DNA of 64,000 nucleotides, from the IMG/VR virus record IMGVR_UViG_3300032782_000001, positions 248,001-312,000 of that record; one strand, given 5' to 3'. The translations under genes were made by a program, and so were the position numbers. The notes under the pieces are model-generated. The model saw nothing but the letters and a program-made list of their open reading frames with translations, did no database searches and had not been told where the DNA came from. Positions 40,093 to 62,778 of the stretch are shown here, piece by piece. Position 1 is the first letter of the stretch; the number at the start of each line of letters is the position of its first letter.

Positions 40093-40334
40093 AATTCCAC
40101 GAATGGAAAGACACTGGGATCAGAGCCACCGATTTGCGCTCCTTCGGACGGTCGAAAAAGAAAATGTCCCGGTACGAGTGCACGAAATGTGGACTCGTGA
40201 TGAACATTTCAGATGTCGATATTCAAATCGAAAAGAAAAACCCCGGGCATATCCACACCGTCGCTAAGGAAACAGTTCAGTCTGATTTCCAAGACTGTGA
40301 TCTCACAATCGTGGCTATGGTGATGAAGACTTAG
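40089..40334 (+). CDS. Small CxxC protein with divergent VMKT tag
   Basis: CTKC...DCDLTIVAMVMKT*; GTGA overlap with the ligase gene. Confidence 0.6.
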   Translation: MKFHEWKDTGIRATDLRSFGRSKKKMSRYECTKCGLVMNISDVDIQIEKKNPGHIHTVAKETVQSDFQDCDLTIVAMVMKT

Positions 40335-41824
40335 CCGTCGTCTTTCGCCAAAAGAGGCTTCAGCCCGGCTGCCTTTCGGAATTCATCTTCCACCCATTGA
40401 CGAGCTGAAACTATATCTTCAGATGAAAGGCGCTCATGTGACACCCAAGAACGATATTCACCTGGGGTACCTTTGTATAGAACAACATCTTTGGAAAAAT
40501 CCAATGATGCCTTGTCGAATTGAATGTTATGCTTTTCAGGGGATTCGAAAATAGGAGTACCTTCATACGGAGTCGTAATCGAAACATCCGCGTCATCAAG
40601 GCCCTCTTGAGCCATGAGGACAAGCCAATTTCTGAGTGCAGAAATAGTTTCAGGAGTCTCACCGGGAAGACCAACTTGAGTGAAGACTTTAGGGCGGATC
40701 CTGTACTTCACACAGAGACGGACAAACGCCGTGTTATCCTCAACTGTTGCACCTTTCCGAATATCGCGGAGAATCTTCGGATCCGCGGCTTCTGCGCCAG
40801 TACACATTTGAACGCATCCGGCTTCCGCCATAGACTTGAAGATAGAATCAGTTGTTAAGTTCTTCCCATTCTTGAAGAAAGCCCTCCAGAGAATTCCTTC
40901 TTCCTTTAACATTGGAAGGAATTTGCTCATGAAATCTGGCCTCAAGTTGATTTCATCATCGTAAAACATGAAAGCCCGCCATCCGTACATCTCACGGACA
41001 TGACGGATCTCTTCACGGACTTTCTCTGAAGATTTCGCTTCGAGTTTCCGATACCCATCCCAGTGTGAACAATAGGTGCACGCAAAAGGACAGCCGGTAG
41101 CGCTTACAATAGAAGTAGCCCGTTCTCCACCCACGAGATAATTGTAACTTTTGAGGTCAATAAGATCTCGAGCCGGGAGAGGCCATCTGTCATTCTGATA
41201 GACGACACCGTCATGCATTAAGTGTGAAGCTTCTTCCTTGGAAAGACGGCTGGGTAGTTTAATGATGCGTTCATTCTGTTCCCAACCAATTTCGCAATTA
41301 TCCTTGAGTATGCGCAACTGGTTGGTCTTTCTACTAAGCTCTGGTTTATTAGCGAGTCGCTCAGTAGAACGAGATATTCTGTTCAACAATTCGATGAAGC
41401 CAGGCTCCCCACCACCACCACCTTGATCCGAGACTACGACGTAGTCAAACGCGTCGTCGAGACACCTGGACGGTGCAGTGTTGGCATGAGGACCTCCAAT
41501 AGCAGTGATGCATTTAGGATTATGGGTCCGAATGAAAGCATTCAGTTTTACAACTTGAGGATGTTGCGCAGCAAGAGAATAGAACCCAACGAGATCCGCG
41601 TCTTGAGCCATTTCCCAAAGGTATTTTTCAGCTTCATCCATGACAGCGTCATAAGACGCGTGAACAATCTCAGGATGTCGTTGCTTATACCCAGTCAGGT
41701 CAGCTACTCGGATTTCATGACCGAGTTGCCTCGCCACTGCCCCGATTTGGAGTGGACCTAAGAAGGGAAAGGCCCTGTCATCAAGGAGAAAGGGGGAGGG
41801 AGGAATAACAAGACAAATCCGCAT
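40331..41824 (-). CDS. B12-binding radical SAM enzyme (class B methyltransferase-like)
   Basis: N-terminal cobalamin-binding-like region (FLGPLQIGAV...GGPHAN) and CxxxCxxC GCPFACTYC; FYDDEIN; GAEAAD..IL..IRKG. Confidence 0.85.
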   Translation of the reverse strand: MRICLVIPPSPFLLDDRAFPFLGPLQIGAVARQLGHEIRVADLTGYKQRHPEIVHASYDAVMDEAEKYLWEMAQDADLVGFYSLAAQHPQVVKLNAFIRTHNPKCITAIGGPHANTAPSRCLDDAFDYVVVSDQGGGGGEPGFIELLNRISRSTERLANKPELSRKTNQLRILKDNCEIGWEQNERIIKLPSRLSKEEASHLMHDGVVYQNDRWPLPARDLIDLKSYNYLVGGERATSIVSATGCPFACTYCSHWDGYRKLEAKSSEKVREEIRHVREMYGWRAFMFYDDEINLRPDFMSKFLPMLKEEGILWRAFFKNGKNLTTDSIFKSMAEAGCVQMCTGAEAADPKILRDIRKGATVEDNTAFVRLCVKYRIRPKVFTQVGLPGETPETISALRNWLVLMAQEGLDDADVSITTPYEGTPIFESPEKHNIQFDKASLDFSKDVVLYKGTPGEYRSWVSHERLSSEDIVSARQWVEDEFRKAAGLKPLLAKDDG

Positions 41825-41839: not shown

Positions 41840-42967
41840 TCATGAACGACCTAAGGAAGACATACGACGATTCAAAATGCCTTCCAGGCGTTTGCAATTG
41901 GATTCCCAAGTATATTTCAAAGCCCTTTTCCTGGATTTACGAACTATTTCCTGACGGTATCCTTCTTCTCGTAAGAGCCGAATTACTTCATCCGTAAACG
42001 TGTCAAGATTATTTTTAATATCAGGAATCGTTATCGCGGCACCCCCGTAAAGCTGACCAAGCGCATCTACATTACTCGTAACGACAGCGGCCCCCGCGTA
42101 ACAGGCTTCCAATATCGTATTAGAGAATCCTTCAGTCCAACGAACAGGATCACAGGGGTACGCCAAAACTTGGGCTTCGCTCATTTCACGAGCGATCCTC
42201 TTGCGACTCACAGATTTGAAGTGTTCAATACCGTGTCCGCGAAGCCTTTCTACTGCTTCGCTGCAGTATAAGGCTCGATGTTTCTGTTCATGTAAAGCGG
42301 GTTCTGCATGGAAAGGGATTGCTTTCATGGCAGCTACCCACGGATCAAAATTATAGAAAATTCTTAGGACAGCGTGAGGGACTTGACGACGAATATGAGG
42401 CCACTGCTGAAGAAGTAAATGTAACCCACGATCAGGGGATGAAGCGTAAATTACGCGACCCGGAATCTTAGCACATTCATCAAATGCAGACGGGTCCATC
42501 CCGTTATAGAAAGATTCCCATTTATTATCGGGAACGGCCGGTGCGCATGTCTTGAGGTATTCCGTGTGGGTCTCACTGAGACCGCCAACAACATCCACAA
42601 ATGATTCCCAGCCCGGTTTGCAATACCCGAAATCATTAAGTTGTTGATCAACAACCCGGAGGGGTCCCGGAGCTACCCCGTGGATGAAATCAGGATTCAT
42701 CCACGCCATGATCACATCAAATTGATTTTTATCTGAAGATGTGTAGGCATCGAACGGGCGAATCAAAACACCGTTCCATAAAAACCTGTCAGGAGTATTG
42801 ACTGTAACTGTGAAAATTGTAACTTCATGACCCAATTTTGCCATACCCTCAGCATAGCAAAAACATGAGACTTCGGAACCCGTGAGACCTCGATCGTCTT
42901 CATAGAGACGGGTGAAATCGAAAGGTCTTCCAATACAGAATGACCCGAAAACGAAAGCAATTCTCAT
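41840..42967 (-). CDS. Glycosyltransferase, GT-B (GT4-like)
   Basis: LTGSEVS..LGHEV, IYASSPDRGL, EGFSNTILEA. Confidence 0.85.
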   Translation of the reverse strand: MRIAFVFGSFCIGRPFDFTRLYEDDRGLTGSEVSCFCYAEGMAKLGHEVTIFTVTVNTPDRFLWNGVLIRPFDAYTSSDKNQFDVIMAWMNPDFIHGVAPGPLRVVDQQLNDFGYCKPGWESFVDVVGGLSETHTEYLKTCAPAVPDNKWESFYNGMDPSAFDECAKIPGRVIYASSPDRGLHLLLQQWPHIRRQVPHAVLRIFYNFDPWVAAMKAIPFHAEPALHEQKHRALYCSEAVERLRGHGIEHFKSVSRKRIAREMSEAQVLAYPCDPVRWTEGFSNTILEACYAGAAVVTSNVDALGQLYGGAAITIPDIKNNLDTFTDEVIRLLREEGYRQEIVRKSRKRALKYTWESNCKRLEGILNRRMSSLGRS

Positions 42968-44097
42968 TTACCGACTTTCGTTGCAATGGCGTCATGAAGA
43001 ATTTTCTCTAATCTATCCGTGAGGACAGGCCAACTATGTTTCTCAGCAAGAATCTTAGTGTTATCAGTGGCCTCTTTCCGGAATGAAGACTCTGTAAGAG
43101 ATCTGATGACCAATTCCGTCCATTCTTCTAAGTGGTCTCGGACTGGACTACGAACTATCGTCTTCACGCTTCCACCGTAGACTGATCCAAGAGCGTCAAC
43201 GTCGGTAATTACCGGGACCGCACCAGCTGCGCAAGCTTCCATAATAGTAACGGAAAAGCCTTCCGTATAAGTAACAGTATCACATGGATACGCAAGCACG
43301 AGTGCCGAAGCCATCTCTTCTGCCATTCTGAGTCGGCTAATGCTTTTGAAATGTTGAACATCAGAATCTTTGAGCCTGTTGAATGCCTCACGAATATAGT
43401 GAGCACGATATGCACATTCACGAACATGAGGATGATGGGACGGATCTTCACATGGGAGAAGATTCTGAATCCAGTCATCGAAATTGTAGAAGACGCGAAG
43501 ATTAGCTTCAGGGACACGGCGTTTGATCAAGGGCCATTGTTGAAGCAACCAATGAAGACCACGGTCAGGAGAGGAAGCGTATAGAACTCGTCCGGGAACT
43601 TTGTCTATGATCGGATAAGCAGTTGGATCACACCCATTTGGGAGGACAACCCATTTGTGGCCGTTCCCGTATTTTCCAACCATATGACTAAGATGGGCGG
43701 AACAAGGGCTAGAATAAATATCAACACAAGAATCAAAACCGGGTTGACAGTATGTAAAATCATTAAGTTGCTGATTGACGAACCTAACCGATTTGGCAGG
43801 TACGCCACGAAGGTTGTCAGGCTCATTCCATGAAAGAACGGCGTCTTCTGTCCAACCTGTCCTGGTATCTGACCAAGCAGAAATTGGAAATATCCTTATC
43901 CCTGACCAGTCCAGACGTGAAGAGGAACTTATGGGGGCGAAAAGTTTGACCTCATGGCCTCGTAATGCCAGTTCTTTGGCAAAACTAAAACATGAAATTT
44001 CAGATCCTGTAAGACCTCTCGGATCCTCGAAAAGACGCGAAAAGTCAAACGGACGGGGTCCGCAAGCCCAAGAACCATATACGAAAGATAGTTTCAC
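42964..44097 (-). CDS. Glycosyltransferase, GT-B (GT4-like), paralogue of neighbour
   Basis: LTGSEIS, LYASSPDRGL, EGFSVTIMEA. Start placed at GTG 44097 (GTGA overlap). Confidence 0.85.
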   Translation of the reverse strand: MKLSFVYGSWACGPRPFDFSRLFEDPRGLTGSEISCFSFAKELALRGHEVKLFAPISSSSRLDWSGIRIFPISAWSDTRTGWTEDAVLSWNEPDNLRGVPAKSVRFVNQQLNDFTYCQPGFDSCVDIYSSPCSAHLSHMVGKYGNGHKWVVLPNGCDPTAYPIIDKVPGRVLYASSPDRGLHWLLQQWPLIKRRVPEANLRVFYNFDDWIQNLLPCEDPSHHPHVRECAYRAHYIREAFNRLKDSDVQHFKSISRLRMAEEMASALVLAYPCDTVTYTEGFSVTIMEACAAGAVPVITDVDALGSVYGGSVKTIVRSPVRDHLEEWTELVIRSLTESSFRKEATDNTKILAEKHSWPVLTDRLEKILHDAIATKVGK

Positions 44098-45044
44098 GTT
44101 AATTTGGGGTCTACGAACTCGCGGAACCATGCAACAGTATGAACAATCCCATCTACATAATCAATCTTCGGCTCCCATCCAAGGATGGTCTTAGCAAGTG
44201 TGATGTCGGGGCATCGCTGCCTAGGATCGTCTTCCGGGAGCGGCAGGCTGATAAGATCGGGAGCATAATCGAAAGCCGATTGGACATCTTTAGCTACAGA
44301 CAGAATTGATCTTTCGTCCGGGTTTCCTATATTGACGACCGGGACTTTCATTCTGTCCCTTTCCATTTCCGACAGCAAAATGAGACCTCGGACAGTATCA
44401 GTCACATAACAGAAACTGCGGGTCTGCCGACCATCTCCATAAACAGTCAGAGGTTCTTTACGCATGGCTTGCATGATAAAATTCGGGATGAGTCTCCCGT
44501 CGTCATGAGCCATTCGGGGACCGTATGTGTTAAAAATGCGTGCAATTCGAATGTCGGTCTTATACTGTTGGGCCCAAGAAACTGCCAAAGCTTCTCCGGC
44601 CCTCTTACCTTCATCATAGCAGGCACGTTTCCCGATAGGATTAACGTGACCAACGTATGATTCGACTTGCGGATGAACTTGAGGATCACCGTAAACTTCG
44701 GAAGTGGAAGCAATTACAATTTTGGAATTTGCATTGCGAGCGCATTCCAATGCATTCAACGTCCCAATGACAGCAGTTTTGATTGTGTTGACGGGATTAC
44801 GTTGATACTGAACGGGGCTTGCAGGACAGGCAAGATGAAAAACCACATCACATTCAATATTCCAAGGTTCACAGACATCGTGACGATGAAATTCGAAATT
44901 GGATCTCTTCAATAAATGCGAAATATTCTCGCGCCTAGATGTGAAGAGGTTATCTATGCAGACAACATCATGCTTTTGTTCGCATAATTGTTCACATAAA
45001 TGTGAACCAATGAACCCTGCACCACCAGTTACGAGAATTTTCAC
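44094..45044 (-). CDS. uxs: UDP-glucuronate decarboxylase (UDP-xylose synthase), extended SDR
   Basis: ILVTGGAGFIGSHL, HLACPASP..YQRNP, ASTSEVYGDP..HPQ.E.Y.G.VNPIG.RACYDEGKR, FNTYGPRM, DDP.QRCPDI. Confidence 0.9.
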   Translation of the reverse strand: MKILVTGGAGFIGSHLCEQLCEQKHDVVCIDNLFTSRRENISHLLKRSNFEFHRHDVCEPWNIECDVVFHLACPASPVQYQRNPVNTIKTAVIGTLNALECARNANSKIVIASTSEVYGDPQVHPQVESYVGHVNPIGKRACYDEGKRAGEALAVSWAQQYKTDIRIARIFNTYGPRMAHDDGRLIPNFIMQAMRKEPLTVYGDGRQTRSFCYVTDTVRGLILLSEMERDRMKVPVVNIGNPDERSILSVAKDVQSAFDYAPDLISLPLPEDDPRQRCPDITLAKTILGWEPKIDYVDGIVHTVAWFREFVDPKLT

Positions 45045-45052: not shown

Positions 45053-46057
45053 CTACCGAGCAGAAATAGTTTGAAGCCTCATACCTCTAATATCCAATTC
45101 AGGATTAACAGGATCTGCATATCCAGTGGCATGACCGGTTAGGTATAACTGCTCATTTGCACGCTCTGAACGCAACATCTTCCGAATGATCATCAAATCA
45201 TGAACATCGGTGATGTGAACGATATTGGTAGGCTTGAGATACCATTGAGTTCCGAGTCTCATAAATAGGCGATCAGAAACTTCAGAATCCTGCCATCCAT
45301 GGCTTCCGTCGTATCTTTCATCAAAGCCATTGACCAACAGAAGTAACTCCGTAGGGATGCTATCATTCTTAAGATGACAAAATTGAGGTTCAATAAATCC
45401 TTCGGGTTTGGATTTTTTCATCTCCTCGTGAATGATTGGGAGATGAAGTGGATTATCGTTGGATTGGAAAGGTTTTTCAAAAATACTCCACATATAACGA
45501 TCAAGAAGCCCAGAACTCAAATCCTGGCAGTATGAATCACACCATTCACGAGTAGCAGAATGACGAATAGTGTCATCATCCCATTTAGCGAGTACGTCAG
45601 GTTTCGGGACTCCACGTCCCATCCCGAGCTCACAAAGTCCATATCGGGCGGGGAATCCTGGAGAAACGAGCGGAAGGCCGAGCAAATGGCAAACACCAAG
45701 CATTGCGTGGTTGGGACCGCGAGCTTGATGGAAATCGGCATGTTCTTGTAAACAACCAGGAGGCAGCCACGAGTAATCGCAAGTGAAATACGAAATGGGA
45801 CCAGAAGCGTTCACCAAACCCGTGTTCACACACCGCTGATAACTATTTAGCGGGAACGGGTTATCTCGTGGCTCCACATGACGAATTGGAAAATGATACT
45901 GAGAAGCTTTCTCCGCGACGATAGACTGGCGTTTGTTCCAAAGACAGTCCACAAGGACAAGTTCAAAATCTTTGAAAGTCTGTTGTTCCAGACCTGCAAA
46001 GAGAATATCCAGTCCTCCGACTCGAAGAGTCGGAACAATAACAGAGATCAGGGGCAT
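45053..46057 (-). CDS. Glycosyltransferase family 2 protein
   Basis: MPLISVIVPT (ATG 46057, right after the upstream stop), FELVLVD, NGFDERYDGSHGWQD. Confidence 0.8.
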   Translation of the reverse strand: MPLISVIVPTLRVGGLDILFAGLEQQTFKDFELVLVDCLWNKRQSIVAEKASQYHFPIRHVEPRDNPFPLNSYQRCVNTGLVNASGPISYFTCDYSWLPPGCLQEHADFHQARGPNHAMLGVCHLLGLPLVSPGFPARYGLCELGMGRGVPKPDVLAKWDDDTIRHSATREWCDSYCQDLSSGLLDRYMWSIFEKPFQSNDNPLHLPIIHEEMKKSKPEGFIEPQFCHLKNDSIPTELLLLVNGFDERYDGSHGWQDSEVSDRLFMRLGTQWYLKPTNIVHITDVHDLMIIRKMLRSERANEQLYLTGHATGYADPVNPELDIRGMRLQTISAR

Positions 46058-46058: not shown

Positions 46059-46586
46059 CTACGCCTTGTAACAATCGACGTGGAACTCCCAGAAGACACC
46101 TGGGTTTGTGTTCCCTCTGAAGGAAAAATTAGTATAACCGTATTTCTCCAGAAGTTTTTGCATGGTTTCCCGGGTGAAACCCTGACAATGCTTATCAAAT
46201 TGTTCAAATAAATCGCCGTGTAGGGATCCCTGTTCGCCCCAAATGAGTTCACTCAGCATGGGATTGCTGGGGTCTCGAATGAATCGTGACATGACTTCAG
46301 CCATGTCAACCTCCACAATGTGAAGAAGACCACCAGGCGCCATAACACGATGAATGTCTGCCATGACGCGGTCGTGATATTTCGGCGGCAAATGAAGCAT
46401 CAAGAACCCTGCATACACTTCTATAACAGAATAATCTGGATAAGGAATAGCATCCGTCCGAGCGTCCCAGAGAACATCGCACTCGCAATCGGAATTTGGC
46501 CATTTCTTGACTACGTCAAGATTGACCCATCCACCACCAGTGAAATGAGTAGTACCACAAGCCAGATTGAGGCGGATGTCGGTCAC
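46059..46586 (-). CDS. Class I SAM-dependent methyltransferase (type-11-like)
   Basis: LNLACG..GWVNLD, IPYPDYSV, RVMAPGG. Confidence 0.8.
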   Translation of the reverse strand: MTDIRLNLACGTTHFTGGGWVNLDVVKKWPNSDCECDVLWDARTDAIPYPDYSVIEVYAGFLMLHLPPKYHDRVMADIHRVMAPGGLLHIVEVDMAEVMSRFIRDPSNPMLSELIWGEQGSLHGDLFEQFDKHCQGFTRETMQKLLEKYGYTNFSFRGNTNPGVFWEFHVDCYKA

Positions 46587-47623
46587 AAGAACTCCTCATA
46601 AATAACTCTGAGTTCTTCCGCATGAGACTTGGCCCAAGATAAAACCCTGGACGTACCCATTTCCACGTTCACAACCGGAGCCCACTTTGTAATTGTAGAA
46701 AATTTCTGATGATTCGTAATGAAGATACTGTCTTCATGTCGGCGACCGGGACCATAAGATGTAGATAAAGGCTTTCCATGAATCTTTTGGATTAAGTCCA
46801 CAGCTTCGCAGACGCTCAATGAATTCTGGATACCTCCGCCGATATTGTAAACATTCCCTTGGAGTTCACGGATATTGGAAAATGAGGCCCACACCGCGGA
46901 AGCAACGTCATCAGAAAAGAGCATGTCTCTGGTTTGGAAACCGCTGCCTTGGATTTCCAAAGTCCGTCCTAAAGCAGCAGAAATACAGAACCAAGTTAGC
47001 CAACCATGACGGGGTCCATGACAAGGTGCATCCCCATATAGATTGGAACACCGAAGAGTAGTCACAGGTAAATCATATGTGCGACCATAAGCCATAACCA
47101 AGGCAGTCTGAGCCATTTTGGAAGCCGCGTATGGCTCATCAGGCTCGAGAAGACATGTTTCATCGATCCCACCGGAAAAACGACCCTCCAAAACAAATCG
47201 CTTTCCATGGATGTGCGATGGTAGATCATGAACTCTATACGGCTTCACACTTGAAAGCATGACTGTAGGTGGAACCGAGGTTCTCATTTTTCTCATTGCC
47301 TCGAGGATATGTCTCGAGGCATTCACATTACTCATCCAATCATCGTGAGGATCTTCAGCACTATGAGGGATACCGGTATGAGCTGCTGCGTGGAGAACGA
47401 AATCGTGACTTCGAAGTAAGGACTCAAAGTCAGAATTTTCGACACGCTGTTTAAGGATCGTTACAAGTTCTCCGTAGGATGAATACAAAACGTCAGACAT
47501 CCACAGATTCCGCGGTTCCTCAGCGTGATCTACTACAGTGACCATGTGACCGGATTGAGCAGCAAGTTCCACGAACCTACTACCTACAACCCCGAGGCCG
47601 CCAGTGACGAGATACCGCATCAA
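46583..47623 (-). CDS. NAD-dependent sugar epimerase/dehydratase, CDP-paratose/tyvelose 2-epimerase-like
   Basis: YLVTGGLGVVGS, PYAASK (YxxxK), GWLTWF, QTRDMLF..DV, YNIGGG..NSLS. Confidence 0.8.
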   Translation of the reverse strand: MMRYLVTGGLGVVGSRFVELAAQSGHMVTVVDHAEEPRNLWMSDVLYSSYGELVTILKQRVENSDFESLLRSHDFVLHAAAHTGIPHSAEDPHDDWMSNVNASRHILEAMRKMRTSVPPTVMLSSVKPYRVHDLPSHIHGKRFVLEGRFSGGIDETCLLEPDEPYAASKMAQTALVMAYGRTYDLPVTTLRCSNLYGDAPCHGPRHGWLTWFCISAALGRTLEIQGSGFQTRDMLFSDDVASAVWASFSNIRELQGNVYNIGGGIQNSLSVCEAVDLIQKIHGKPLSTSYGPGRRHEDSIFITNHQKFSTITKWAPVVNVEMGTSRVLSWAKSHAEELRVIYEEFL

Positions 47624-51923: not shown

Positions 51924-51952
51924 GGCAAACTCCTTCGATTTCAACCGCTTGA

Positions 51953-51985: not shown

Positions 51986-52789
51986 TCACAATTCGTAAAA
52001 AATCAAACTGACCTGAACAGTATTGGCAGTAGTAGCATCGGGCTTCACATACATAGTAATGCGAGCCGGGCCAGCTATGGGTAAATCTTCAAGATCGTAT
52101 ACTTGCTGCGGTTGAGCAGTAATGATGCGAAATTGACCCCCGAATTGACGCTCCAATGCGTTGGCTGTAAGAGGTAAAGCAACGCGAAGAATTCCACCAC
52201 AACTAGCACCCTGAGTGCCAAGCAAAAGTCGCTTAATAAAACATGTTTTACCAGCTTGTACGTAATGATGTGCCCAGAAAGTTTGGCCATCACTTGCTGC
52301 AATAGTACCTACTGTGGTCGCACCATTTTTAATTGAAATGGTTCCAACATTAGTACCATTGGATCCCACAGTGATACTGTCAATTCGTTCAATAAAACAA
52401 TAATTGGAATGGGTTGCAGTAACATTGCTAGTTCCGTTCATCGTAAGAGTTTCAGTAAATGGACCAGACATGGTTTGATCATAATAAGTAATCTTAACAG
52501 TCCTGGTCCCCGTACCAGCTGCAGCATCATTTGCAGAAGACGAAGAAACCGTAGCAGTAAAATTAGCACTTTGCTCTGTGTATGTCGTCGCACGTACAGC
52601 AACAATGCTAGTTGCAGAAGTAGATACATATCCACCTTGCATGGAAATTACGCCGCCAGAAATGAGACCCCTAGCAATAGCTACTCCAGGCGATGCAGAA
52701 TATTGGAATCCATTCGGGTCAACAATGGCAGCATTGCCATTCTCATCGTAGAATGTGGAATTGACTACAGGGCGGTCATTGATTGCCAT
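51986..52789 (-). CDS. Virion decoration/fibre-associated protein, paralogue 1
   Basis: Shares ~190-aa domain (RAT.YTEQ...SSSSANDA.AGTG.RTV.ITYYD...HHYV) with the next two genes. Confidence 0.6.
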   Translation of the reverse strand: MAINDRPVVNSTFYDENGNAAIVDPNGFQYSASPGVAIARGLISGGVISMQGGYVSTSATSIVAVRATTYTEQSANFTATVSSSSANDAAAGTGTRTVKITYYDQTMSGPFTETLTMNGTSNVTATHSNYCFIERIDSITVGSNGTNVGTISIKNGATTVGTIAASDGQTFWAHHYVQAGKTCFIKRLLLGTQGASCGGILRVALPLTANALERQFGGQFRIITAQPQQVYDLEDLPIAGPARITMYVKPDATTANTVQVSLIFYEL

Positions 52790-55503: not shown

Positions 55504-58500
55504 TTAGACGTCCCTCGTCATGGAGTATGACGTCAATCTGTTACCCGAATAGGTGTAGTTAATGGTAACCTGAGACACGATCGTCACCCCATCTGCGGCA
55601 TAAACCTTCCGAACCTCGGTCGTGAGCTTGTTGCCCATATATGTATAATTAATCTGCTTCAGCAAGCTATTATCAGAATGGCGCCTCCATTGTTCCTGAA
55701 TGATATTATTTCCAGAATAAGTATTGGAATAATCGTTGGAAGGTGCTACAGGATCTGCCGCAAGCAAAAGGTCGCTCGGACCGGTGGGACCAGTTGCGCC
55801 CTGGACTCCAGTTGCGCCTTGTGGACCGGTCGCACCCTGCGGTCCGGTTGGACCCGTGACACCTAGCGGTCCAGTTGGACCCGTGGCCCCTGTGACTCCG
55901 GGAGATCCTTGAATACCTTGAGGGCCAATGGGACCAGTTGCACCCGTGACACCCGGTGAGCCTTGTGGACCGATTGGACCCGTAGCTCCAGTGACTCCAG
56001 GAGAACCTTGCGGGCCTGTTGATCCTTGAGAACCAGTTGCACCAGTGACACCCGGTGATCCTTGAGGACCTATGGGACCGGTTGCCCCAGTAATACCTTG
56101 AATTCCAGTGGCGCCTTGTGGTCCAGTTGCTCCTGTAATTCCTGGAGATCCTTGCGGACCAACTGGACCAGTTGCACCAGTAACACCGGTGACACCCGGA
56201 GATCCCTGTGTCCCTTGAACACCAGTCGCACCTCGCGGGCCGGTGGGACCGGTTGCACCCGTGACTCCAGGAGATCCCTGCGTTCCCTGAGGACCAGTAA
56301 ATCCAGTGACACCCGGAGATCCATGCGTCCCTTGAATACCAGTCGCACCCTGGGGACCCGTCGCACCTGTGACTCCAGGAGACCCTTGAGGCCCGGTGGC
56401 TCCGGTTACGCCTGTAACTCCAGGAGAGCCTTGAGGACCAGTTGCTCCAGTGACGCCGGGAGACCCTTGAGGACCAATAGGACCTGTAAATCCAGTAACA
56501 CCAGGGGATCCTTGCGTTCCTTGAGGCCCAATCGCACCTTGAGGCCCAGTGGGACCAATGGGACCAGTAACTCCAGGGGATCCTTGGACACCTGTCGCAC
56601 CTTGAGGGCCAGTTGGACCCGTTGCTCCGGGGGATCCTTGCGGGCCTGTTGCACCAGTAACTCCAGGGGATCCTTGGATTCCTTGAGGACCCGTAGGACC
56701 CGTGGCTCCAGTAACCCCAGGAGATCCTTGTGGCCCAGTTGCACCTGTGACTCCGGTGATTCCAGGAGAGCCTTGGGGCCCAGTTGCACCGGTAACGCCC
56801 GGGGACCCTTGAATGCCTTGTGCGCCAGTAGCGCCGGTGACACCAGGAGATCCTTGGGGACCAGTTGCGCCTTGAGGCCCTGTCGCTCCGGTTACACCAG
56901 GAGAACCTTGAATTCCCTGAGGACCAGTTGCACCAGTAACGCCGTCAGCACCAGTTGATCCTTGCGGACCGGTCGCTCCAGTGATGCCTGGAGGCCCTTG
57001 TGGCCCCGTGGCTCCAGTGACTCCGGTGACACCAGGAGATCCTTGGGGACCAATTGCACCCGTGGCTCCAGTGACTCCGGGAGATCCTTGTGGTCCAGTG
57101 GATCCAGTGACTCCTGGTGAACCTTGCGTACCTTGAGAACCGGTTGCACCTTGTGGTCCTGTGGGTCCAGTTGCTCCGGTAACACCATCAACTCCAGTTG
57201 CACCCTGTGGTCCAGTTGCACCAGTAACCCCCGGCGATCCTTGCGTTCCTTGAGGACCGGTAGCACCAGTAACCCCCGGCGATCCTTGCGTTCCTTGAGG
57301 ACCGGTAGCACCCGTGTTCCCTGGAGAACCTTGCGGACCAGCTGGCCCTGTGGCGCCTGTAACACCAGGTGATCCTTGAATTCCTTGCGGACCAGTTGCA
57401 CCAGTAACTCCAGGACTTCCTTGCGGACCAGTGGCCCCCGTGACACCATCTGCGCCAGTGGCACCCTGAGGCCCTGTTGCACCTGTAACTCCGGGAGATC
57501 CTTGTGGGCCGGTGGAGCCTTGCGGCCCCGTTGGACCCGTGGCTCCAGTAATTCCGGGTGAACCTTGTGCGCCTTGCGGACCGGTCGGGCCAGTAAAACC
57601 GGTGAATCCAGGCGAGCCCTGGTCTCCTTGTGGACCTGTAGCTCCAGTGACGCCAGGGCTACCTTGAGGTCCAGTGGGCCCTGTTGCACCTGTAACCCCG
57701 GGGGATCCTTGAGGTCCAGTGGGACCGGTAAAACCTGTGATTCCAGGAGACCCTTGAACACCTTGAGGTCCGGTTGGCCCTGTGGCGCCAGTCGCACCTT
57801 GCGGGCCTGTGACGCCGGTGAACCCAGGTGATCCTTGAGGACCAGTTGCACCAGTGACTCCTGGAGATCCTTGCGGTCCAATTGGACCCGTCGCACCGGT
57901 GAATCCAGGCGAACCCTGATCACCTTGTGGGCCCGTTGGGCCTGTGGCCCCCGTGACTCCAGGCGATCCTTGATCGCCCTGGGGACCAGTTGGACCCGTC
58001 GCTCCTGGAGATCCTTGCCCACCTTGAGGACCAGTGGGCCCTGTGGTGCCGGTGATTCCAGGAGAACCCTGTGGACCTTGCGGACCAGTTGGCCCGGTCG
58101 CGCCAGTAACTCCTGGAGATCCTTGTTCCCCTTGAGGCCCCGTAGGACCGGTCGAGCCCGTGACTCCAGGAGAACCTTGGATTCCCTGCGGGCCGGTTGC
58201 ACCAGTAACACCATCGGCGCCAGTCGCTCCAGTAACCCCTGGGGATCCTTGAGTACCCTGAGGCCCGGTCGATCCCGTGACTCCGGTAACACCTGGAGAC
58301 CCTTGGACTCCTTGGGGACCCGTCGGCCCTGTAGCTCCAGTGACTCCATCAGCTCCGGTTGCACCTTGAGACCCGGTAGAACCTGTAACGCCCGGTGATC
58401 CTTGTGGACCGATCGGACCGGTTGCTCCAGTGACGCCAGGGCTACCTTGAGAACCAACTGGACCGGTTACTCCTGGAGACCCTTGTCCTCCTTGAGGACC

Positions 58501-61500
58501 TGTAGGACCTGTCGCTCCAGTAACACCATCCGCACCAGTGGGTCCTTGAGGACCTGTCGCGCCAGTAGCCCCCGTTACACCGTCCGCGCCAGTGGGTCCT
58601 TGAGGCCCCGTGAGACCCGTCGCGCCAGGAGAGCCTTGAATCCCCTGCGGGCCAGTCGCTCCAGTAATGCCGGGTGAACCTTGATCGCCTTGCGGTCCAG
58701 TTGGACCCGTAGACCCGGTTACACCAGGAGAGCCTTGGATGCCTTGGAAACCTGTGGCGCCTTGCGGACCTGTGGGACCAGTCGCGCCAGTAACTCCATC
58801 GATTCCAGTTGCACCTTGTGGACCAGTTGCTCCAGTAACACCTGGAGATCCTTGACTACCTTGCGGACCCGTTGGCCCGGTGGCACCTGTAATCCCCGGG
58901 GACCCTGGATTTCCTTGCGGACCCGTGGGACCAGTAACACCTGGTGATCCTTGAGACCCTGTAGACCCTTCAGGACCAGTTGCACCGGTAACTCCATCTG
59001 CTCCAGTCGCGCCCTGCGGGCCTGTGGGACCAGTGGCACCAGTAACACCTGGCGATCCTTGGATTCCTTGAGGACCCGTAGGACCCGTTGCTCCATCAGC
59101 ACCGGTAACGCCTTGAGGACCTGTCGCGCCGGTAATTCCGGGCGAGCCTTGTGGACCTGTAACACCGGGAGACCCCTGCGGGCCAGTTGCACCGGTGACT
59201 CCATCAGCCCCCGTTGAACCTTGCGGGCCCGTAGCGCCTGTTGCTCCAGGTGATCCTTGCGGGCCCGTGACTCCGGTGACTCCAGGAGATCCTTGTGGAC
59301 CGGTAGGCCCGGTTGAACCGGTAACTCCGTCCGCACCAGTTGCACCTTGGGGACCCGTGACTCCGGTGACTCCGGTAACACCTGGAGAACCTTGTACTCC
59401 TTGGGGCCCAGTAGGGCCAGTAGCACCGGTGACACCATCAGCTCCGGTTGGCCCTTGAGGTCCAGTGGCTCCGGTTACTCCGGGCGATCCTTGCTGTCCT
59501 TGAGGACCGGTCGGGCCTGTAGTACCGTCAACTCCCGTGGCACCTTGTGGACCAATTGGACCTGTAAATCCAGTAACACCAGGGGATCCTTGCGGGCCAG
59601 TTGCACCAGTAACCCCAGGTGAACCTTGGACTCCTTGAGGACCAGTGGCTCCAGTGAATCCTGGAGAACCCTGTTCGCCTTGCGGACCAGTTGATCCAGT
59701 GACGCCAGTAACTCCATCGGCGCCTGTAGCACCTTGGGGTCCAGTGGCCCCCGTGACCCCTGGAGATCCTTGCGGGCCAATTGGGCCTGTGGCCCCCGTG
59801 ACTCCAGGCGATCCTTGATCACCTTGTGGGCCTGTGGGCCCAGTAGCTCCTGTGACGCCAGGCGATCCTTGATCGCCTTGAGGACCTGTGGAGCCAGTAA
59901 ATCCTGGAGACCCTTGCGGGCCCGTAGCTCCGGTTGAACCAGGAGAACCTTGTGGCCCAGTTGCACCAGTTACTCCAGGAGATCCTTGAATTCCTTGAGG
60001 ACCCGTAGAACCGGTTGCACCGGTGACTCCATCGGCACCCGTTGCGCCTTGAGGACCAGTTGGGCCCGTCGCACCAGTGACTCCAGGTGATCCTTGATCG
60101 CCTTGAGGACCCGTTGGTCCGGTGACTCCAGTTACTCCGGGCGATCCTTGGTATCCTTGGGGACCCGTTGCACCTGTAACTCCATCAACCCCCGTTGCGC
60201 CTTGCGGACCAGTAGCCCCCGTGACTCCAGGAGACCCCTGTTCGCCTTGTGGGCCCGTTGGACCTGTCGCACCAGTGATACCTGGGGACCCTGAATCTCC
60301 TTGCGGACCAGTTGGACCCGTAAATCCAGTAACCCCAGGTGATCCCTGTGGTCCCGTTGCTCCAGTAACTCCAGGTGAACCTTGATCGCCTTGCGGGCCA
60401 GTCGGTCCCGTTGCTCCAGTTAGACCATCTGAACCGGTCGCGCCTTGTGGACCAGTTGCACCAGTGACTCCAGGATTTCCTTGCGGACCAGTTGTACCAG
60501 TGACACCATCAACGCCCGTCGCACCTTGAGGTCCCGTTGGACCCGTGGCACCGGTAACGCCGTCCGCTCCAGTCGCGCCTTGCGGACCCGTGGGTCCGGT
60601 AGTTCCAGTAACACCAGGCGAACCTTGATCACCTTGAGGCCCCGTGGCTCCCGTGGCTCCGGGAGAACCTTGAGGCCCGGTTGCACCGGTTACTCCTGGA
60701 CTACCTTGGACACCTTGAGGACCTGTGAATCCTGTGATGCCTGGCGATCCTTGATTACCTTGAAGACCTGTAGCGCCTTGTGGGCCAGTCGCTCCCGTGA
60801 CTCCGGGCGATCCTTGAGGCCCTGTTGCTCCTTGCGAACCAGTTGGACCAGTTGGACCTTGGGGTCCGGTCGCACCTGGAGAGCCTTGAGGACCAGTAGT
60901 CCCCGGAGATCCTTGAGGACCGGTCGCTCCAGTGACACCGTCCGAGCCAGTTGGGCCAGGAGAACCTTGCGGGCCAGTAGAACCTTGCGGGCCAGTTGCT
61001 CCAGTTACTCCGGGCGATCCTTGAGGTCCGATGGCACCTGTGACGCCGGTAGGTCCAGCAGGACCAGTCGGACCTTGAGGCCCCGGTAAACCTGTGAATC
61101 CACGAGGTCCCGGAGTTCCTTGTTCACCTTGCGGACCCGTGGGCCCAGTAGCCCCCGCAGGACCAGTCGGACCTGTGGATCCCGTGACTCCGGGGGATCC
61201 TTGGATGCCCTGAGGACCTGGAGAACCTTGAGGTCCGGTAGTTCCCACAGGACCAGTTGGACCCGTTGCACCAGTAACCCCAGGTGAACCTTGAACGCCC
61301 TGTGGCCCTGTTACTCCTTGCGGACCCGTGGCACCTTGCGGACCCGTAGGCCCAGCCGAACCTGTAACGCCTTGGGGTCCGGTAGAACCTTGCGGACCCG
61401 TGGCACCTTGCGGACCCGTGGCACCTTGCGGACCCGTCGGTCCCGTGGCACCTTGTGGGCCCACGGGCCCAGTCGAACCTTGAATTCCAGTAACACCTTG

Positions 61501-62778
61501 CGGACCAGTTGGTCCAGTTGGACCAGTCGCGCCTTGGGGTCCCGTGGCTCCTTGTGGACCAGTTGGACCAGTCGCGCCTTGAGACCCAGTGGATCCCTGA
61601 GGACCTGTCGCCCCTTGAGGCCCGGTTGTGCCTGTAGCGCCGCGAGGACCGGTAGGTCCTGTAGAGCCAGTTACACCTTGGAACCCTGTAGCTCCTTGCG
61701 GTCCAGTGACACCTTGCGGACCAGTTGGCCCAATTGATCCAGTAGGACCAGTTGGACCAGTCGCGCCCTGAAGGCCCGTAGCTCCTTGCGGACCCGTAGC
61801 TCCGGTAGTTCCTTGGGCTCCCGTGGGACCTTGGGCTCCCGTGGCACCCTGAGGACCTGTGAAGCCAGGAGAGCCTTGTGGACCCGTCGTCCCTGGGCTT
61901 CCTTGGGGTCCCGTAGCTCCAGTAACTCCTTGGGGACCGGTCGCTCCTTGGGGACCGGTCGCTCCGGTAACTCCTGGATTTCCTTGGGGTCCCTGAAGAC
62001 CAGTTGCACCTCGAGGACCTGGAGTCCCCTGAATGCCCTGATCGCCTTGGGGACCTGTTGTACCCGTTGCGCCGGTAACGCCAGGACTCCCTTGAACCCC
62101 TTGAATACCTTGAAGACCAGTCGCGCCCTGCGGACCCGTTGCGCCAGCAGGACCTGTGGGACCAGTCGCTCCAGTTGATCCTTGAAGACCAGTCGCGCCC
62201 TGCGGACCCGTTGCGCCCTGCGGTCCAGTCGCACCAGTTATTCCCGGTGAACCTTGCGGTCCAGTTGGACCCGTTGCGCCTTGCGGACCCGTTGCGCCTT
62301 GCGGACCCGTTGCGCCGGTAAAGCCAGGTGAACCTTGATCACCTTTCGGACCCGTGGGACCAGTTGCCCCCGTTGATCCTTGTGGACCTGTTGATCCTTG
62401 TGGACCCGTTGGACCTGTTGAACCCTGGATTCCAGTCGCGCCTTGCGGACCGGTCGGTCCCGTCGCCCCATCTGGACCGGTGTTACCCTGGGGACCTATT
62501 GGTCCCGTAGAACCCGGTACACCATCAGCTCCTGTTGTGCCTTGAGGCCCCGTAGGCCCTGTGGGACCAACAGGTCCGATCGAACCGGTAATGCCTTGAA
62601 GACCCGTTGCACCTTGCGGACCCGTAACTCCAGCAGGACCCGTTGCTCCGGTAACACCGTCTATTCCGGTCGGACCTTGGACACCAGTTACCCCCGGCGA
62701 CCCTTGCGGACCTTGGGGGCCCGTAGCTCCAGTCGCCCCAGGATGCCGCGGCGCTCCTCGGGGGTTGTCGATCGACAT
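55504..62778 (-). CDS. Giant collagen-like fibre protein (2424 aa)
   Basis: Residues ~14-2335 are Gly-X-Y ([15 protein letters not shown]). The 89-aa C-terminal domain has two INYTY.GN.L repeats. Confidence 0.92.
55774..62739 (-). repeat. Gly-X-Y coding repeat, including a perfect 45-bp tandem duplication at 57218-57312
   Basis: 9-bp periodicity with diverse codons; gcaccagtaacccccggcgatccttgcgttccttgaggaccggta occurs twice in tandem. Confidence 0.9.

What the first reader, a model, noticed from the sequence alone, without database searches (positions are those of the whole stretch)
40331..62778. Phage-encoded glycosylation island next to Thr-rich collagen fibres: a putative glycosylated virion coat
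Seen: seven contiguous sugar-related genes (two GT4-like, one GT2, the GT2-TPR-MTase-GT4 fusion, UDP-xylose synthase, CDP-epimerase-like, methyltransferase), plus a B12 radical SAM enzyme and a GH-like barrel. All lie co-directionally downstream of a collagen with hundreds of G-x-T triplets and three Ser/Thr-rich paralogues. Established: Bacillus/Clostridioides BclA collagen-like proteins are O-glycosylated on their repeats by GT genes encoded nearby, and Thr glycosylation can stabilise triple helices lacking hydroxyproline. Inference: the phage builds a methylated, xylose/deoxy-sugar glycan on its fibres, reminiscent of mimivirus fibrils.
Basis: partly seen in the sequence, partly recalled or inferred. 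Interest (0 to 1): 0.7.

Follow-up and report, generated by a model that had tools for sequence, protein, structure and literature searches.

The report
Megaphage sugar-coating genes beside giant collagen
A 436-kb wetland phage packs all its detectable sugar-transfer enzymes into one tight gene array just behind a 2,424-residue collagen-like fibre gene, which suggests, but does not prove, that it coats its own fibres with a custom sugar chain, a trait so far shown only for a few small phages and giant eukaryotic viruses.

Summary
Window 40331-63955 (minus strand) holds 14 genes separated by -37 to +41 nt. They are a conserved unknown, a 2,424-aa collagen (774 unbroken G-X-Y triplets, 387 of them G-x-T), three jelly-roll paralogues and a GH18-like barrel. 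Then come a GT2-TPR-methyltransferase-GT4 fusion, an SDR epimerase-like enzyme, a small methyltransferase, a GT2-like protein, UDP-xylose synthase, two GT4s and a radical SAM enzyme.

The genome is a complete 436-kb tailed phage from a wetland. Every glycosyltransferase detected in it lies in this island.

The fusion's GT2 domain is closest to GmaR, the Listeria flagellin O-GlcNAc transferase, which has the same GT2+TPR build. Its homologues sit inside virion gene modules in unrelated phages: directly after the major head gene, or between collagen-like tail fibres. In about 19 related huge-phage contigs they lie within 0-18 kb of giant collagens of up to 3,965 aa.

The genome lacks lipid-carrier, export and DNA-hydroxymethylation genes.

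Best reading (about 0.5): cytoplasmic O-glycosylation of virion fibre proteins with a xylose-containing, methylated oligosaccharide.

Caveats: the collagen link is essentially one inherited arrangement, three small phages carry the enzyme without any collagen, and no direct evidence shows a glycan on any protein. Novelty: a new variant of a known kind.

The parts
62783..63955 (-). Conserved unknown (390 aa; the longest ORF is 425 aa and runs beyond the window). It is the first gene of the array, 4 nt upstream of the collagen. Its N-terminal ~100 residues resemble those of the conserved 299-aa protein at 37760-38659.
   Evidence: Homologues lie directly upstream of the collagen in L002 (51%) and L023 (46%). 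No Pfam or PHROG hit.
55504..62778 (-). Giant collagen-like protein, 2,424 aa. It has a 13-residue N-terminus, 774 uninterrupted G-X-Y triplets (387 G-x-T) and an 89-aa C-terminal domain. If fully triple-helical it would be about 0.66 micrometre long. Proposed fibre shaft and main glycan acceptor.
   Evidence: Pfam Collagen 1107 bits. Triplet statistics. Tiled by independent contigs with 0 mismatches but with alternative repeat joints.
53764..55500 (-). Paralogue 1 (578 aa). It has imperfect collagen-like 32-residue repeats, a middle domain and a C-terminal jelly-roll domain.
   Evidence: 96-nt tandem repeat at 55103-55362.
52792..53760 (-). Paralogue 2 (322 aa), with the same C-terminal jelly-roll domain.
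51986..52789 (-). Paralogue 3 (267 aa), a member of a large phage-only family (phrog_8198). The model is a jelly-roll beta sandwich.
   Evidence: AF2 pLDDT 87.6. Fold matches are generic: XepA Z 10, viral jelly rolls, BclA C-terminal domain Z 7.2.
51006..51944 (-). GH18-like (beta/alpha)8 barrel (305-312 aa). D133, G134, D138, E140 and Y141 are invariant. It travels with the paralogues, not with the sugar genes.
   Evidence: Atlas 'GTA TIM-barrel-like', 0.95. AF2 pLDDT 72.5. Foldseek Cwp19 2e-8, GH18 ENGases, PgaB. Conservation. Synteny.
47620..50988 (-). Four-domain enzyme, 1,122 aa.
- GT2: residues 6-183, nt 50440-50973, with DGDD invariant.
- TPR: residues about 195-400, nt 49789-50406.
- Class I methyltransferase: residues 537-701, nt 48886-49380.
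- GT4: residues about 770-1105, nt 47674-48681, with EX7E invariant.

Proposed priming protein O-glycosyltransferase that also extends and methylates the glycan.
   Evidence: Pfam. phrog_13126 5.7e-39. GmaR 1.6e-19 and SunS 1e-7. Invariant residues.
46583..47623 (-). Extended SDR (346 aa), closest to CDP-tyvelose 2-epimerase. GxxGxxG and YxxxK are intact. Nucleotide-sugar epimerase of unknown substrate.
46059..46586 (-). Small class I methyltransferase (175 aa).
   Evidence: Weak Pfam hits, 3e-4. Sequence.
45053..46057 (-). GT2-like (GT-A) protein, 334 aa. The start is revised to the ATG at 46057.
   Evidence: NCBIfam EpsD 4.3e-8. Start codons. 66% homologue in L017. No PDB match.
44094..45044 (-). 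UDP-glucuronate decarboxylase (UDP-xylose synthase), 316 aa.
   Evidence: Human UXS1, 1e-102 over the full length. Motifs intact.
42964..44130 (-). GT4 glycosyltransferase a (388 aa as called; the true start may lie a little downstream). EX7E present.
41840..42967 (-). GT4 glycosyltransferase b (375 aa), 45% identical to a. EX7E present.
40331..41824 (-). Radical SAM enzyme (497 aa) with a B12-binding-like N-terminal domain and a CxxxCxxC motif. It is the last gene of the array.
   Evidence: Pfam. NCBIfam HpnJ, RiPP C-methyltransferase and AprD4 models. Best PDB match is AprD4, 1e-14.
39448..40092 (+). Boundary marker, not part of the system: a minimal ATP-dependent DNA ligase (214 aa), convergent with the array. 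It is conserved at this position in relatives.

Best explanation
The island is a self-contained cytoplasmic protein O-glycosylation pathway of a 436-kb tailed phage. It acts on virion fibre proteins encoded in the same array.

Proposed steps (all inferred from homology and gene order):
1. Host UDP-glucuronate is converted to UDP-xylose by the phage UXS. The SDR supplies a second, epimerised nucleotide sugar.
2. The GT2-TPR module of the fusion recognises the nascent fibre protein through its TPR domain, as GmaR is proposed to recognise flagellin. It attaches the first sugar to Ser/Thr.
3. The GT4 domain of the fusion, the GT2-like protein and the two GT4s extend the chain to a short oligosaccharide.
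4. The two methyltransferase domains O-methylate it. The radical SAM enzyme may C-methylate or deoxygenate a sugar.

The most likely acceptor is the almost uncharged, Thr/Gln-rich giant collagen. There the glycan could stabilise and solubilise a roughly 0.66-micrometre triple helix that has no hydroxyproline. The Ser/Thr-rich jelly-roll proteins are possible further acceptors.

The fibre is more likely a long tail or whisker-type fibre with exchangeable distal heads than a capsid coat.
For: Shown:
- 14 co-directional genes with gaps of -37 to +41 nt and no transmembrane segments.
- Every GT-A and GT-B Pfam match in the 436-kb genome lies in this island.
- Catalytic motifs are intact and conserved.
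- The GT2 domain's best solved relative is GmaR, which has the same GT2-then-TPR order (PMC9638930). Next come the peptide S-glycosyltransferases SunS/ThuS.
- The family (phrog_13126) is embedded in structural modules of unrelated phages. In five L036-type phages it follows the major head gene directly. In MW202524 it lies one gene after the head gene. In L043 it lies between two collagen-like tail-fibre genes.
- In 19 huge-phage loci (the collagen-linked clade) the fusion lies next to, or within about 18 kb of, giant collagen ORFs of up to 3,965 aa. This holds despite rearrangements and GT2-TPR identities down to 37%.
- In L003 the collagen stop codon abuts the fusion start.
- The five genes before the sugar block are all in the top 6% of the genome for Ser+Thr.
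- No thymidylate-synthase-family hydroxymethylase is present, and no ORF has more than 4 TM-like segments.
- The phage is tailed, and another of its collagens sits next to Baseplate_J.

Precedents:
- BclA3 is glycosylated by the adjacent SgtA (PMC7157674).
- Virion glycosylation in mycobacteriophages, as cited in PMC12619734.
- The chlorovirus enzyme A064R, a GT-GT-methyltransferase fusion (PMC9614988).
Against: - Nothing shows directly that a glycan sits on any protein.
- All collagen-linked copies form one clade. The linkage may therefore be inherited synteny rather than repeated selection. Only L043 is a second, long-branch case.
- Three small phage genomes (70-100% complete) carry the fusion and have no collagen. 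Collagen is therefore not the family's obligate substrate.
- Two other Thr-rich collagens of this same genome lie far from the island. G-x-T richness alone does not therefore imply a dedicated glycosylation system.
- In L021 the linked collagen has Ser/Thr at X rather than Y.
- The giant collagen's presence in the virion is inferred only from analogy.
- UDP-glucuronate must come from the host, because the phage has no Ugd.
- Cellular TPR-GT2 relatives have uninformative contexts.
Confidence: 0.5

Rival explanations
1. Host-envelope remodelling. The island is an auxiliary metabolic cluster. It alters host LPS, capsule, EPS or cell-wall glycans during infection, for superinfection exclusion or receptor masking. 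The soluble GTs would act on host lipid-linked intermediates. Its position next to the collagen would be incidental.
For: - GT2, GT4, UXS and SDR sets are typical of bacterial surface-polysaccharide loci. Source annotations call homologues 'glycosyltransferase involved in cell wall biosynthesis'.
- PHROGs files the families under 'moron, auxiliary metabolic gene and host takeover'.
- A recent survey counts huge-phage GTs as envelope-associated (10.64898/2026.10.24.761521).
- The phage relies on host UDP-glucuronate.
Against: - The genome has no priming phosphoglycosyltransferase and no flippase, polymerase or exporter. No ORF in the whole genome has more than 4 TM-like segments.
- The lead GT carries a TPR domain and is closest to protein and peptide GTs.
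- In small phages the family sits inside the head and tail late operons.
- It is tightly packed with fibre genes.
Confidence: 0.2
2. Virion glycosylation of a different target. The island glycosylates capsid, tail-tube or other virion proteins, as in mycobacteriophages and as the MCP-adjacent small-phage homologues suggest. The collagen would be unmodified.
For: - The fusion follows the major head gene directly in L035-L038 and L040, and lies one gene after it in MW202524.
- The family occurs without any collagen in three phage genomes.
- Mycobacteriophage precedent, cited in PMC12619734.
Against: - In this genome the candidate major capsid gene (weak hit) is about 37 kb away and the baseplate about 60 kb away.
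- The genes abutting the island are the collagen and the Ser/Thr-rich proteins.
- Linkage to giant collagens is kept across the whole huge-phage clade despite rearrangement.
Confidence: 0.15
3. RiPP-like or small-molecule chemistry. The SunS-like GT2 and the class-B-like radical SAM enzyme mature a peptide or natural product (glycocin-like or aminoglycoside-like) rather than a structural protein.
For: - SunS/ThuS similarity.
- The radical SAM enzyme hits RiPP C-methyltransferase models (3e-25) and AprD4.
Against: - The array has no small precursor-peptide gene, protease or exporter.
- The radical SAM enzyme is missing from several relatives that keep the rest of the island (L002, L004).
- The structural-module context in other phages argues against it.
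Confidence: 0.05
4. DNA hypermodification. The GTs glycosylate modified bases in phage DNA to evade restriction.
For: Phage GTs are classically DNA-modifying (reviewed in PMC12619734, citing Pyle 2024). A DNA ligase gene lies next to the island.
Against: - The genome has no thymidylate-synthase-family hydroxymethylase (the control rang in 10 of 14 genomes).
- The TPR-bearing, GmaR-like lead enzyme, five GT domains with two methyltransferases, and the fibre-gene context all fit a protein glycan better.
Confidence: 0.03

Closest known systems
GmaR of Listeria monocytogenes (flagellin O-GlcNAc transferase, GT2 + TPR)
   Same: N-terminal GT-A domain with a DxD motif, followed directly by a TPR domain. 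It is the best solved-structure match of the island's lead enzyme (1.6e-19 over residues 5-161). It acts on a filament-forming protein in the cytoplasm (PMC9638930).
   Different: GmaR ends in an anti-repressor domain. The phage enzyme instead continues into a methyltransferase and a GT4 domain. Identity is limited to the roughly 160-residue GT core, and the acceptor and sugar are unknown here.
BclA/BclA3 collagen-like exosporium glycoproteins with adjacent GTs (Bacillus, Clostridioides; SgtA)
   Same: G-x-T-rich collagen-like repeats that have no hydroxyproline. A glycosyltransferase gene lies next to the collagen gene (PMC7157674). A filament with a globular distal domain.
   Different: The host here is a phage, not a spore. 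The collagen is 10-30 times longer. No rhamnose or anthrose genes are present. This collagen's C-terminal domain is an 89-aa domain of unverified fold, not a demonstrated C1q-like head. The GT families differ.
Chlorovirus PBCV-1 A064R and partners (virus-encoded capsid glycan synthesis)
   Same: A virus-encoded, cytoplasmic, multi-domain enzyme that joins two GT domains and a methyltransferase. It builds a xylose-containing, O-methylated glycan on a virion protein (PMC9614988).
   Different: That is a eukaryotic virus and an N-linked glycan on the major capsid protein. The GT folds and domain order differ, and no sequence relationship was tested or seen here.
Mimivirus fibrils and collagen-like proteins (L71, L230; fibril glycocalyx)
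   Same: A very large virus with collagen-like genes, its own sugar-nucleotide and GT genes, and glycan-covered surface fibrils (PMC9614988).
   Different: Mimivirus collagen is modified on hydroxylysine by L230. The fibril glycans are polysaccharides on non-collagen proteins. This genome has no capsid of the NCLDV type and is a tailed phage.
Mycobacteriophage virion glycosylation (Freeman et al. 2023, as cited in PMC12619734)
   Same: Phage-encoded GTs decorate the phage's own structural proteins. The GT genes lie near the structural genes.
   Different: The targets there are the C-termini of capsid and tail-tube subunits. Those phages have small genomes and no collagen, UXS or radical SAM enzyme. 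The paper itself was not held, so details come from the citing paper and from memory.

Membership tests
GT2-TPR protein/peptide glycosyltransferases (GmaR, SunS type; phrog_13126) | N-terminal GT-A (GT2) domain with a DxD motif | tested here: met
   Pfam Glycos_transf_2 4e-19. D90-G-D92-D93 is invariant in 5 homologues.
GT2-TPR protein/peptide glycosyltransferases (GmaR, SunS type; phrog_13126) | TPR or TPR-like helical domain directly after the GT domain | tested here: met
   TPR_1, TPR_8 and TPR_11 sub-threshold Pfam hits at residues 209-290. Designed-TPR chains match residues 210-313. phrog_13126 covers residues 8-400.
GT2-TPR protein/peptide glycosyltransferases (GmaR, SunS type; phrog_13126) | Sequence similarity to characterised members | tested here: met
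   GmaR 1.6e-19, SunS 1.2e-7, ThuS-like 3e-7.
GT2-TPR protein/peptide glycosyltransferases (GmaR, SunS type; phrog_13126) | Transfers sugar to a protein side chain | not testable with these tools
   Needs an enzyme assay. The complex prediction gave no answer.
GmaR orthologue (bifunctional anti-repressor) | C-terminal linker and anti-repressor domains that bind MogR | tested here: not met
   Residues beyond 400 are a methyltransferase and a GT4 domain. This is not a GmaR orthologue.
UDP-xylose synthase (UDP-glucuronate decarboxylase) | Full-length similarity to characterised UXS, with the SDR GxxGxxG and YxxxK motifs | tested here: met
   Human UXS1 1e-102 over residues 2-311, about 70 orders of magnitude better than the next class. 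GGAGFIG and YDEGK are present.
BclA-type glycosylated collagen-like filament | Long G-x-T-rich collagen repeat region | tested here: met
   387 of 774 triplets are G-x-T.
BclA-type glycosylated collagen-like filament | C1q/TNF-like trimeric C-terminal head on the collagen chain | tested here: inconclusive
   This collagen ends in an 89-aa domain that was not modelled. Relatives carry different, longer C-terminal domains. The separate paralogue model matches the BclA CTD only at Z 7.2, within the generic jelly-roll range.
BclA-type glycosylated collagen-like filament | O-glycans on the repeat threonines | not testable with these tools
   Needs glycoproteomics.
BclA-type glycosylated collagen-like filament | Glycosyltransferase gene(s) adjacent to the collagen gene | tested here: met
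   Same array, 4.5 kb downstream here. Directly abutting in L003.
Virus-encoded virion glycosylation system | Virus encodes its own GTs and sugar-nucleotide enzymes in or beside structural genes | tested here: met
   Structural context of homologues.
Virus-encoded virion glycosylation system | Glycan demonstrated on a virion protein | not testable with these tools
   No isolate exists and no RNA or proteome data were found.
Lipid-carrier-dependent surface polysaccharide locus (Wzx/Wzy or ABC type) | Priming phosphoglycosyltransferase, flippase/polymerase or exporter (polytopic membrane proteins) | tested here: not met
   The island has no TM segment. By a crude hydropathy scan, no ORF in the genome has more than 4 TM-like segments.
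Phage DNA glycosylation system | Hydroxymethyl-pyrimidine synthesis (thymidylate-synthase-family hydroxymethylase) | tested here: not met
   PF00303 is absent from the complete genome. The control rang in 10 of 14 genomes.
GH18-like glycoside hydrolase (the 312-aa barrel) | (beta/alpha)8 barrel with the D-x-E catalytic motif at the end of strand 4 | tested here: inconclusive
   The barrel topology is modelled at pLDDT 72.5. Matches to Cwp19 and GH18 ENGases have TM about 0.5. D138-x-E140 is invariant, but the middle Asp of the GH18 DxxDxDxE motif is Ile (motif recalled from memory). No Pfam hit.

The most novel reading that the evidence does not exclude
Wetland megaphages of about 400 kb carry collagen triple-helical 'hairs' of 0.7 to more than 1 micrometre. 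These would be the longest collagen-like fibres proposed for any virus. A dedicated phage pathway would O-glycosylate them along their length with a xylose-containing, methylated oligosaccharide. The pathway's priming enzyme is a flagellin-glycosyltransferase-like GT2-TPR module. The glycan would replace hydroxyproline and charge pairs as the stabiliser of an almost uncharged helix, and would give the virion a bacterial-virus counterpart of the mimivirus glycocalyx. The same enzyme family would be a general, previously unrecognised virion-glycosylation module, used on capsids in small phages.
Probability: 0.3. Interest if true: 0.8.

Novelty: new variant of a known kind. Interest (0 to 1): 0.6.

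Why it matters
Self-glycosylation of virions is established for chloroviruses, mimiviruses and a few mycobacteriophages. It has not been described for huge phages or for phage collagen-like fibres, in the literature I could search.

If true, it would matter in four ways:
- It would give the abundant, usually 'auxiliary metabolic' glycosyltransferases of huge phages a structural role.
- It would identify a widespread GT2-TPR(-GT4) family as a marker for virion glycosylation across unrelated phages.
- It would explain how nearly uncharged, hydroxyproline-free collagen helices of micrometre length could be stable.
- It would provide a compact enzyme set for glycosylating recombinant bacterial collagens.

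It also bears on how glycan shields affect phage adsorption, immune recognition and environmental persistence.

Tried and rejected
- Giant eukaryotic virus (NCLDV) identity: rejected. There is no Capsid_NCLDV hit, although that control rang nowhere. A Baseplate_J protein is present, the protein families are Uroviricota-only, and the gene packing is operon-like.
- Phage_sheath_1 and Terminase_6N searches of the genome found nothing. The phage is too divergent for these models, so this says nothing about absence.
- Megablast of 24 kb against INPHARED phages: no match.
- Moraphages (PMC12619734): considered as the lineage, but not shown to be this phage's lineage. Their genomes reach only 307 kb and no direct comparison was run.
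- Fold search of the paralogue: only generic jelly-roll matches. No specific function can be drawn from it.
- Promoter and terminator consensus scans of the array: not above shuffles.
- Pattern scan of 185,579 prokaryote genomes with the fusion alignment: no relative found. A word-based protein search did find cellular TPR-GT2 proteins at about 32% identity. Their contexts in Paenibacillus and Ureibacillus were uninformative, with no flagellin or collagen nearby.
- Complex prediction of GT2-TPR (residues 1-410) with collagen residues 1-60: 'no answer' (score 0.01). This is evidence neither for nor against.
- Sequencing-run search: only two wetland DNA runs and no RNA run, so expression could not be examined.
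- Freeman et al. 2023 could not be read because it is not held.

Full report
**What the sequence is**

The window is bases 248001-312000 of a 436,316-bp IMG/VR virus record with direct terminal repeats. It is judged complete. Overall GC is 0.50, a crude ORF call gives about 577 ORFs, and coding density is 93%.

It is a tailed phage, not a giant eukaryotic virus.
- A 1,150-aa Baseplate_J protein lies at genome 227459-230911. A 917-aa collagen-like protein follows it.
- The unknown proteins belong to families known only from Uroviricota.
- One collagen-like ORF inside the window (15072-16685, plus strand) matches tail-fibre PHROGs at 2e-83.
- Sheath, terminase and NCLDV capsid models found nothing, and no isolated phage is similar at the DNA level. 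It is therefore a deeply divergent lineage.
- The only sequencing runs that hold it are wetland metagenomes. The host is unknown.

**Checking the observation**

Fourteen genes lie head to tail on the minus strand from 63955 down to 40331. The gaps between them range from -37 to +41 nt, and none of the proteins has a transmembrane-like segment. Consensus promoter and terminator scans show nothing above shuffles inside the array.

The collagen (55504-62778) has a 13-residue N-terminus and a single uninterrupted run of 774 G-X-Y triplets.
- Thr is at Y in 387 triplets and Gln in 226. Pro is at X in 247 and Ser at X in 132.
- Only 46 of the 2,322 repeat residues are charged. An 89-residue C-terminal domain follows.
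- At 0.286 nm per residue this would be a 0.66-micrometre helix.
- Contigs from an independent assembler tile the gene with no mismatches. One 36x contig and several low-depth ones show alternative repeat joints, so the exact length needs long reads.

The three downstream proteins (578, 322 and 267 aa) share a C-terminal domain at 38-46% identity. Together with the collagen and the next gene, they are all at or above the 94th percentile of the genome for Ser+Thr.

- GT2-TPR-methyltransferase-GT4 fusion.
- An extended SDR closest to CDP-tyvelose 2-epimerase (3e-33).
- A 175-aa methyltransferase (weak).
- A GT2-like protein. Support is weak (EpsD 4e-8) and the start is revised to 46057.
- UDP-xylose synthase (human UXS1, 1e-102).
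- Two GT4 paralogues.
- A radical SAM enzyme whose best solved relative is the sugar diol-dehydratase AprD4.

The nucleotide-binding, YxxxK, CxxxCxxC, DxD and EX7E motifs are all intact.

**The paralogues and the barrel are a separate, structural-looking module**

The 267-aa protein has more than 215 homologues. All are viral, many sit on contigs of 380-490 kb, and the family is phrog_8198. Its model (pLDDT 87.6) is a jelly-roll sandwich. It matches many virion and fibre-tip domains only generically: XepA at Z 10, the BclA C-terminal domain at Z 7.2.

In three more distant huge phages (L006, L010, L011) the order is paralogue, paralogue, then a homologue of the 312-aa protein (up to 83% identical), often followed by a patatin gene. 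None of the three has GT genes or a long collagen within 10 kb. In L010 the unit lies about 8.5 kb downstream of a weak capsid-like gene. Conversely, the complete 427-kb relative G001 has the collagen and the GT island but no paralogue domain.

The 312-aa protein models as a (beta/alpha)8 barrel. Its best matches are Cwp19, GH18 endo-N-acetylglucosaminidases and PgaB. A D-x-E pair is invariant. So the 'GH-like barrel' is real, but it belongs with the fibre proteins. It is plausibly a virion-borne glycanase, not part of the sugar-building block.

**What the lead enzyme resembles**

The first 160 residues of the fusion match the glycosyltransferase domain of Listeria GmaR at 1.6e-19. They match the peptide S-glycosyltransferases SunS and ThuS at about 1e-7.

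GmaR attaches GlcNAc to flagellin. It has the same GT-then-TPR order, and its TPR domain has been proposed to recognise the protein substrate (PMC9638930). The fusion is not a GmaR orthologue, because the anti-repressor domain is replaced by a methyltransferase and a GT4 domain.

A two-GT-plus-methyltransferase fusion has a functional precedent in chlorovirus A064R. That enzyme finishes the xylose-containing, methylated capsid glycan (PMC9614988).

**Where the family sits in other phages**

A scan of IMG/VR with an alignment of the fusion gave 31 loci.

In the huge-phage relatives the order is:
1. giant collagen;
2. a variable set of Ser/Thr-rich ORFs;
3. the fusion;
4. a variable sugar-nucleotide set (UXS in most);
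5. one to three GT4 genes;
6. sometimes the radical SAM enzyme;
7. then the ligase and the conserved 299-aa protein.

Where no collagen lay in the 10-kb flank, a whole-record search found one close by on the same strand:
- a 3,965-aa collagen ORF about 15 kb upstream in G008;
- 2,478-aa and 1,062-aa ORFs about 11-18 kb downstream in G010;
- a 2,063-aa ORF about 17 kb downstream in G018.

In L003 the collagen stop codon abuts the fusion start. The methyltransferase domain is present only in some copies.

A tree of the GT2-TPR domains puts all collagen-linked copies in one clade (96/95 support). The linkage is therefore one old arrangement that has been kept through rearrangement and divergence to about 37% identity. 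It is not many independent events.

Outside that clade the family still sits inside structural modules.
- In five related phages (represented by L036, a complete 56-kb genome) the fusion follows terminase, portal, protease and the major head gene directly.
- In the unrelated podovirus MW202524 a GT2-TPR protein and further GT and MT genes lie one gene after the major capsid gene.
- In the 55-kb phage of L043 a phrog_13126 protein lies between two collagen-like (G-A-T) tail-fibre genes.

Three small phage genomes carry the fusion and have no collagen at all. Collagen therefore cannot be the family's only substrate.

**Excluding the alternatives as far as sequence allows**

- All GT-A and GT-B Pfam matches of the 436-kb genome are in this island.
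- There is no thymidylate-synthase-family hydroxymethylase, the usual prerequisite for glycosylated DNA bases.
- No ORF has more than four TM-like segments. So there is no flippase, polymerase, O-antigen ligase or polyprenyl-phosphate transferase.
- There is no UDP-glucose dehydrogenase, so UDP-glucuronate must come from the host.

These points favour a cytoplasmic protein acceptor. They cannot exclude soluble GTs acting on host lipid-linked intermediates.

**Most likely mechanism (inferred)**

1. Host UDP-glucuronate is turned into UDP-xylose. The SDR makes a second donor.
2. The GT2-TPR module primes Ser/Thr on nascent fibre chains.
3. Four further GT domains extend the chain.
4. Two methyltransferases, and possibly the radical SAM enzyme, tailor it.

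The nearly uncharged, hydroxyproline-free Thr/Gln collagen is the obvious acceptor. Threonine glycosylation stabilising such helices is established for other collagens (my own knowledge). GT genes next to glycosylated collagen-like genes are established for BclA3 and SgtA (PMC7157674).

The C-terminal domains of the collagens differ between relatives, while the stalk and the short N-terminus are conserved. That is the pattern of receptor-binding fibres. I therefore favour a very long tail or whisker fibre over a capsid 'coat'.

**Confidence, novelty and verdict**

I give the protein-glycosylation-of-fibres reading about 0.5. Rivals are host-envelope remodelling at 0.2, another virion target at 0.15, RiPP-like chemistry at 0.05 and DNA modification at 0.03.

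I found no paper describing glycosylation islands linked to collagen fibres in huge phages. The components and the principle are known. This is a new variant of a known kind.

It is interesting mainly for three things:
- the size of the fibres;
- the conserved linkage between collagen and island;
- the hint that one GT2-TPR family marks virion glycosylation across unrelated phages.

Noticed in passing
window 15072-16685 (+): A second collagen-like protein (537 aa; 107 G-X-Y triplets, Thr and Gln at Y). It matches tail-fibre PHROGs strongly (phrog_6320, 2e-83). It lies 24 kb from the GT island, and a third one (917 aa) sits beside Baseplate_J outside the window at genome 223797-226550. They could be trans substrates of the island, or evidence that G-x-T collagens need no dedicated GTs.
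   Followed up: partly
L003:6284-8860 (relative IMGVR_UViG_3300024054_000269): The radical SAM homologue is a single 858-aa ORF. Homology to the window's enzyme is interrupted by an in-frame insertion of about 375 aa (about 1.1 kb). This may be an intein or an inserted domain.
   Followed up: no
records G008 (~202987-210432), G006 (~24674-32875), G010 (~23570-30352), found through L022, L020 and L024: Relatives carry even longer collagen ORFs: open frames of 3,965, 2,966 and 2,478 aa. That implies helices of more than 1 micrometre if real. These are short-read assemblies of repeats, so the lengths need confirmation.
   Followed up: partly
window 51006-51944 (-): The 312-aa barrel protein is the most conserved gene of the fibre module: 83% identity to a 466-kb relative, against 63% for the neighbouring paralogue. 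It has an invariant F-D-G-x-x-x-D-x-E-Y motif that resembles the GH18 catalytic motif with the middle Asp replaced.
   Followed up: partly
window 39448-40092 (+): A minimal 214-aa ATP-dependent DNA ligase (adenylation domain only by Pfam). It is conserved at the downstream edge of the island in most relatives (not seen in L017, L019 or L020), usually on the opposite strand.
   Followed up: no
window 37760-38659 (-) and 62783-63955 (-): The 299-aa protein is the most conserved gene in the neighbourhood (66-84% in relatives). It shares an N-terminal domain of about 100 residues with the 390-aa protein upstream of the collagen. Language-model neighbours below the reliable threshold are baseplate, neck and adaptor families (BppU_N, Mu Gp36, T4 gp13). 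It may be an anchor for fibres.
   Followed up: partly
window 55103-55362 (-), inside the 578-aa paralogue: A 96-nt tandem repeat (2.7 copies, 85% matches) encodes 32-residue units of imperfect G-x-T-G collagen-like sequence with breaks. It may be a flexible or non-helical stalk.
   Followed up: no
window 24277-28950 (-): A 1,557-aa ORF in a locally GC-rich stretch (0.55). It has no PHROG hit and only a sub-threshold DUF2460 (phage tail-associated) Pfam hit. Together with the 1,130-aa ORF at 2067-5459, it is one of the largest unexplained proteins in the window.
   Followed up: no
genome 321518-323551 (+), L012:11518-13551, about 9.5 kb beyond the window: A 677-aa phage protein with a class-A-PBP-type peptidoglycan transglycosylase domain (Pfam Transgly, 3e-44). 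This is unusual for a phage, and it could hint at the host's wall type.
   Followed up: no
L002:9070-9942, L003:11128-11997, L010:12677-13537, L011:12899-13828: A patatin-like phospholipase gene accompanies the paralogue and barrel module in several relatives. It was not noticed in this window's array.
   Followed up: no
genome 222912-223769 (-), L014:7912-8769: A GIY-YIG/NUMOD3 homing-endonuclease gene is inserted between the baseplate-linked 917-aa collagen and the next structural-looking gene (Big_5). Similar endonucleases interrupt the equivalent regions in relatives (L011, L024).
   Followed up: no
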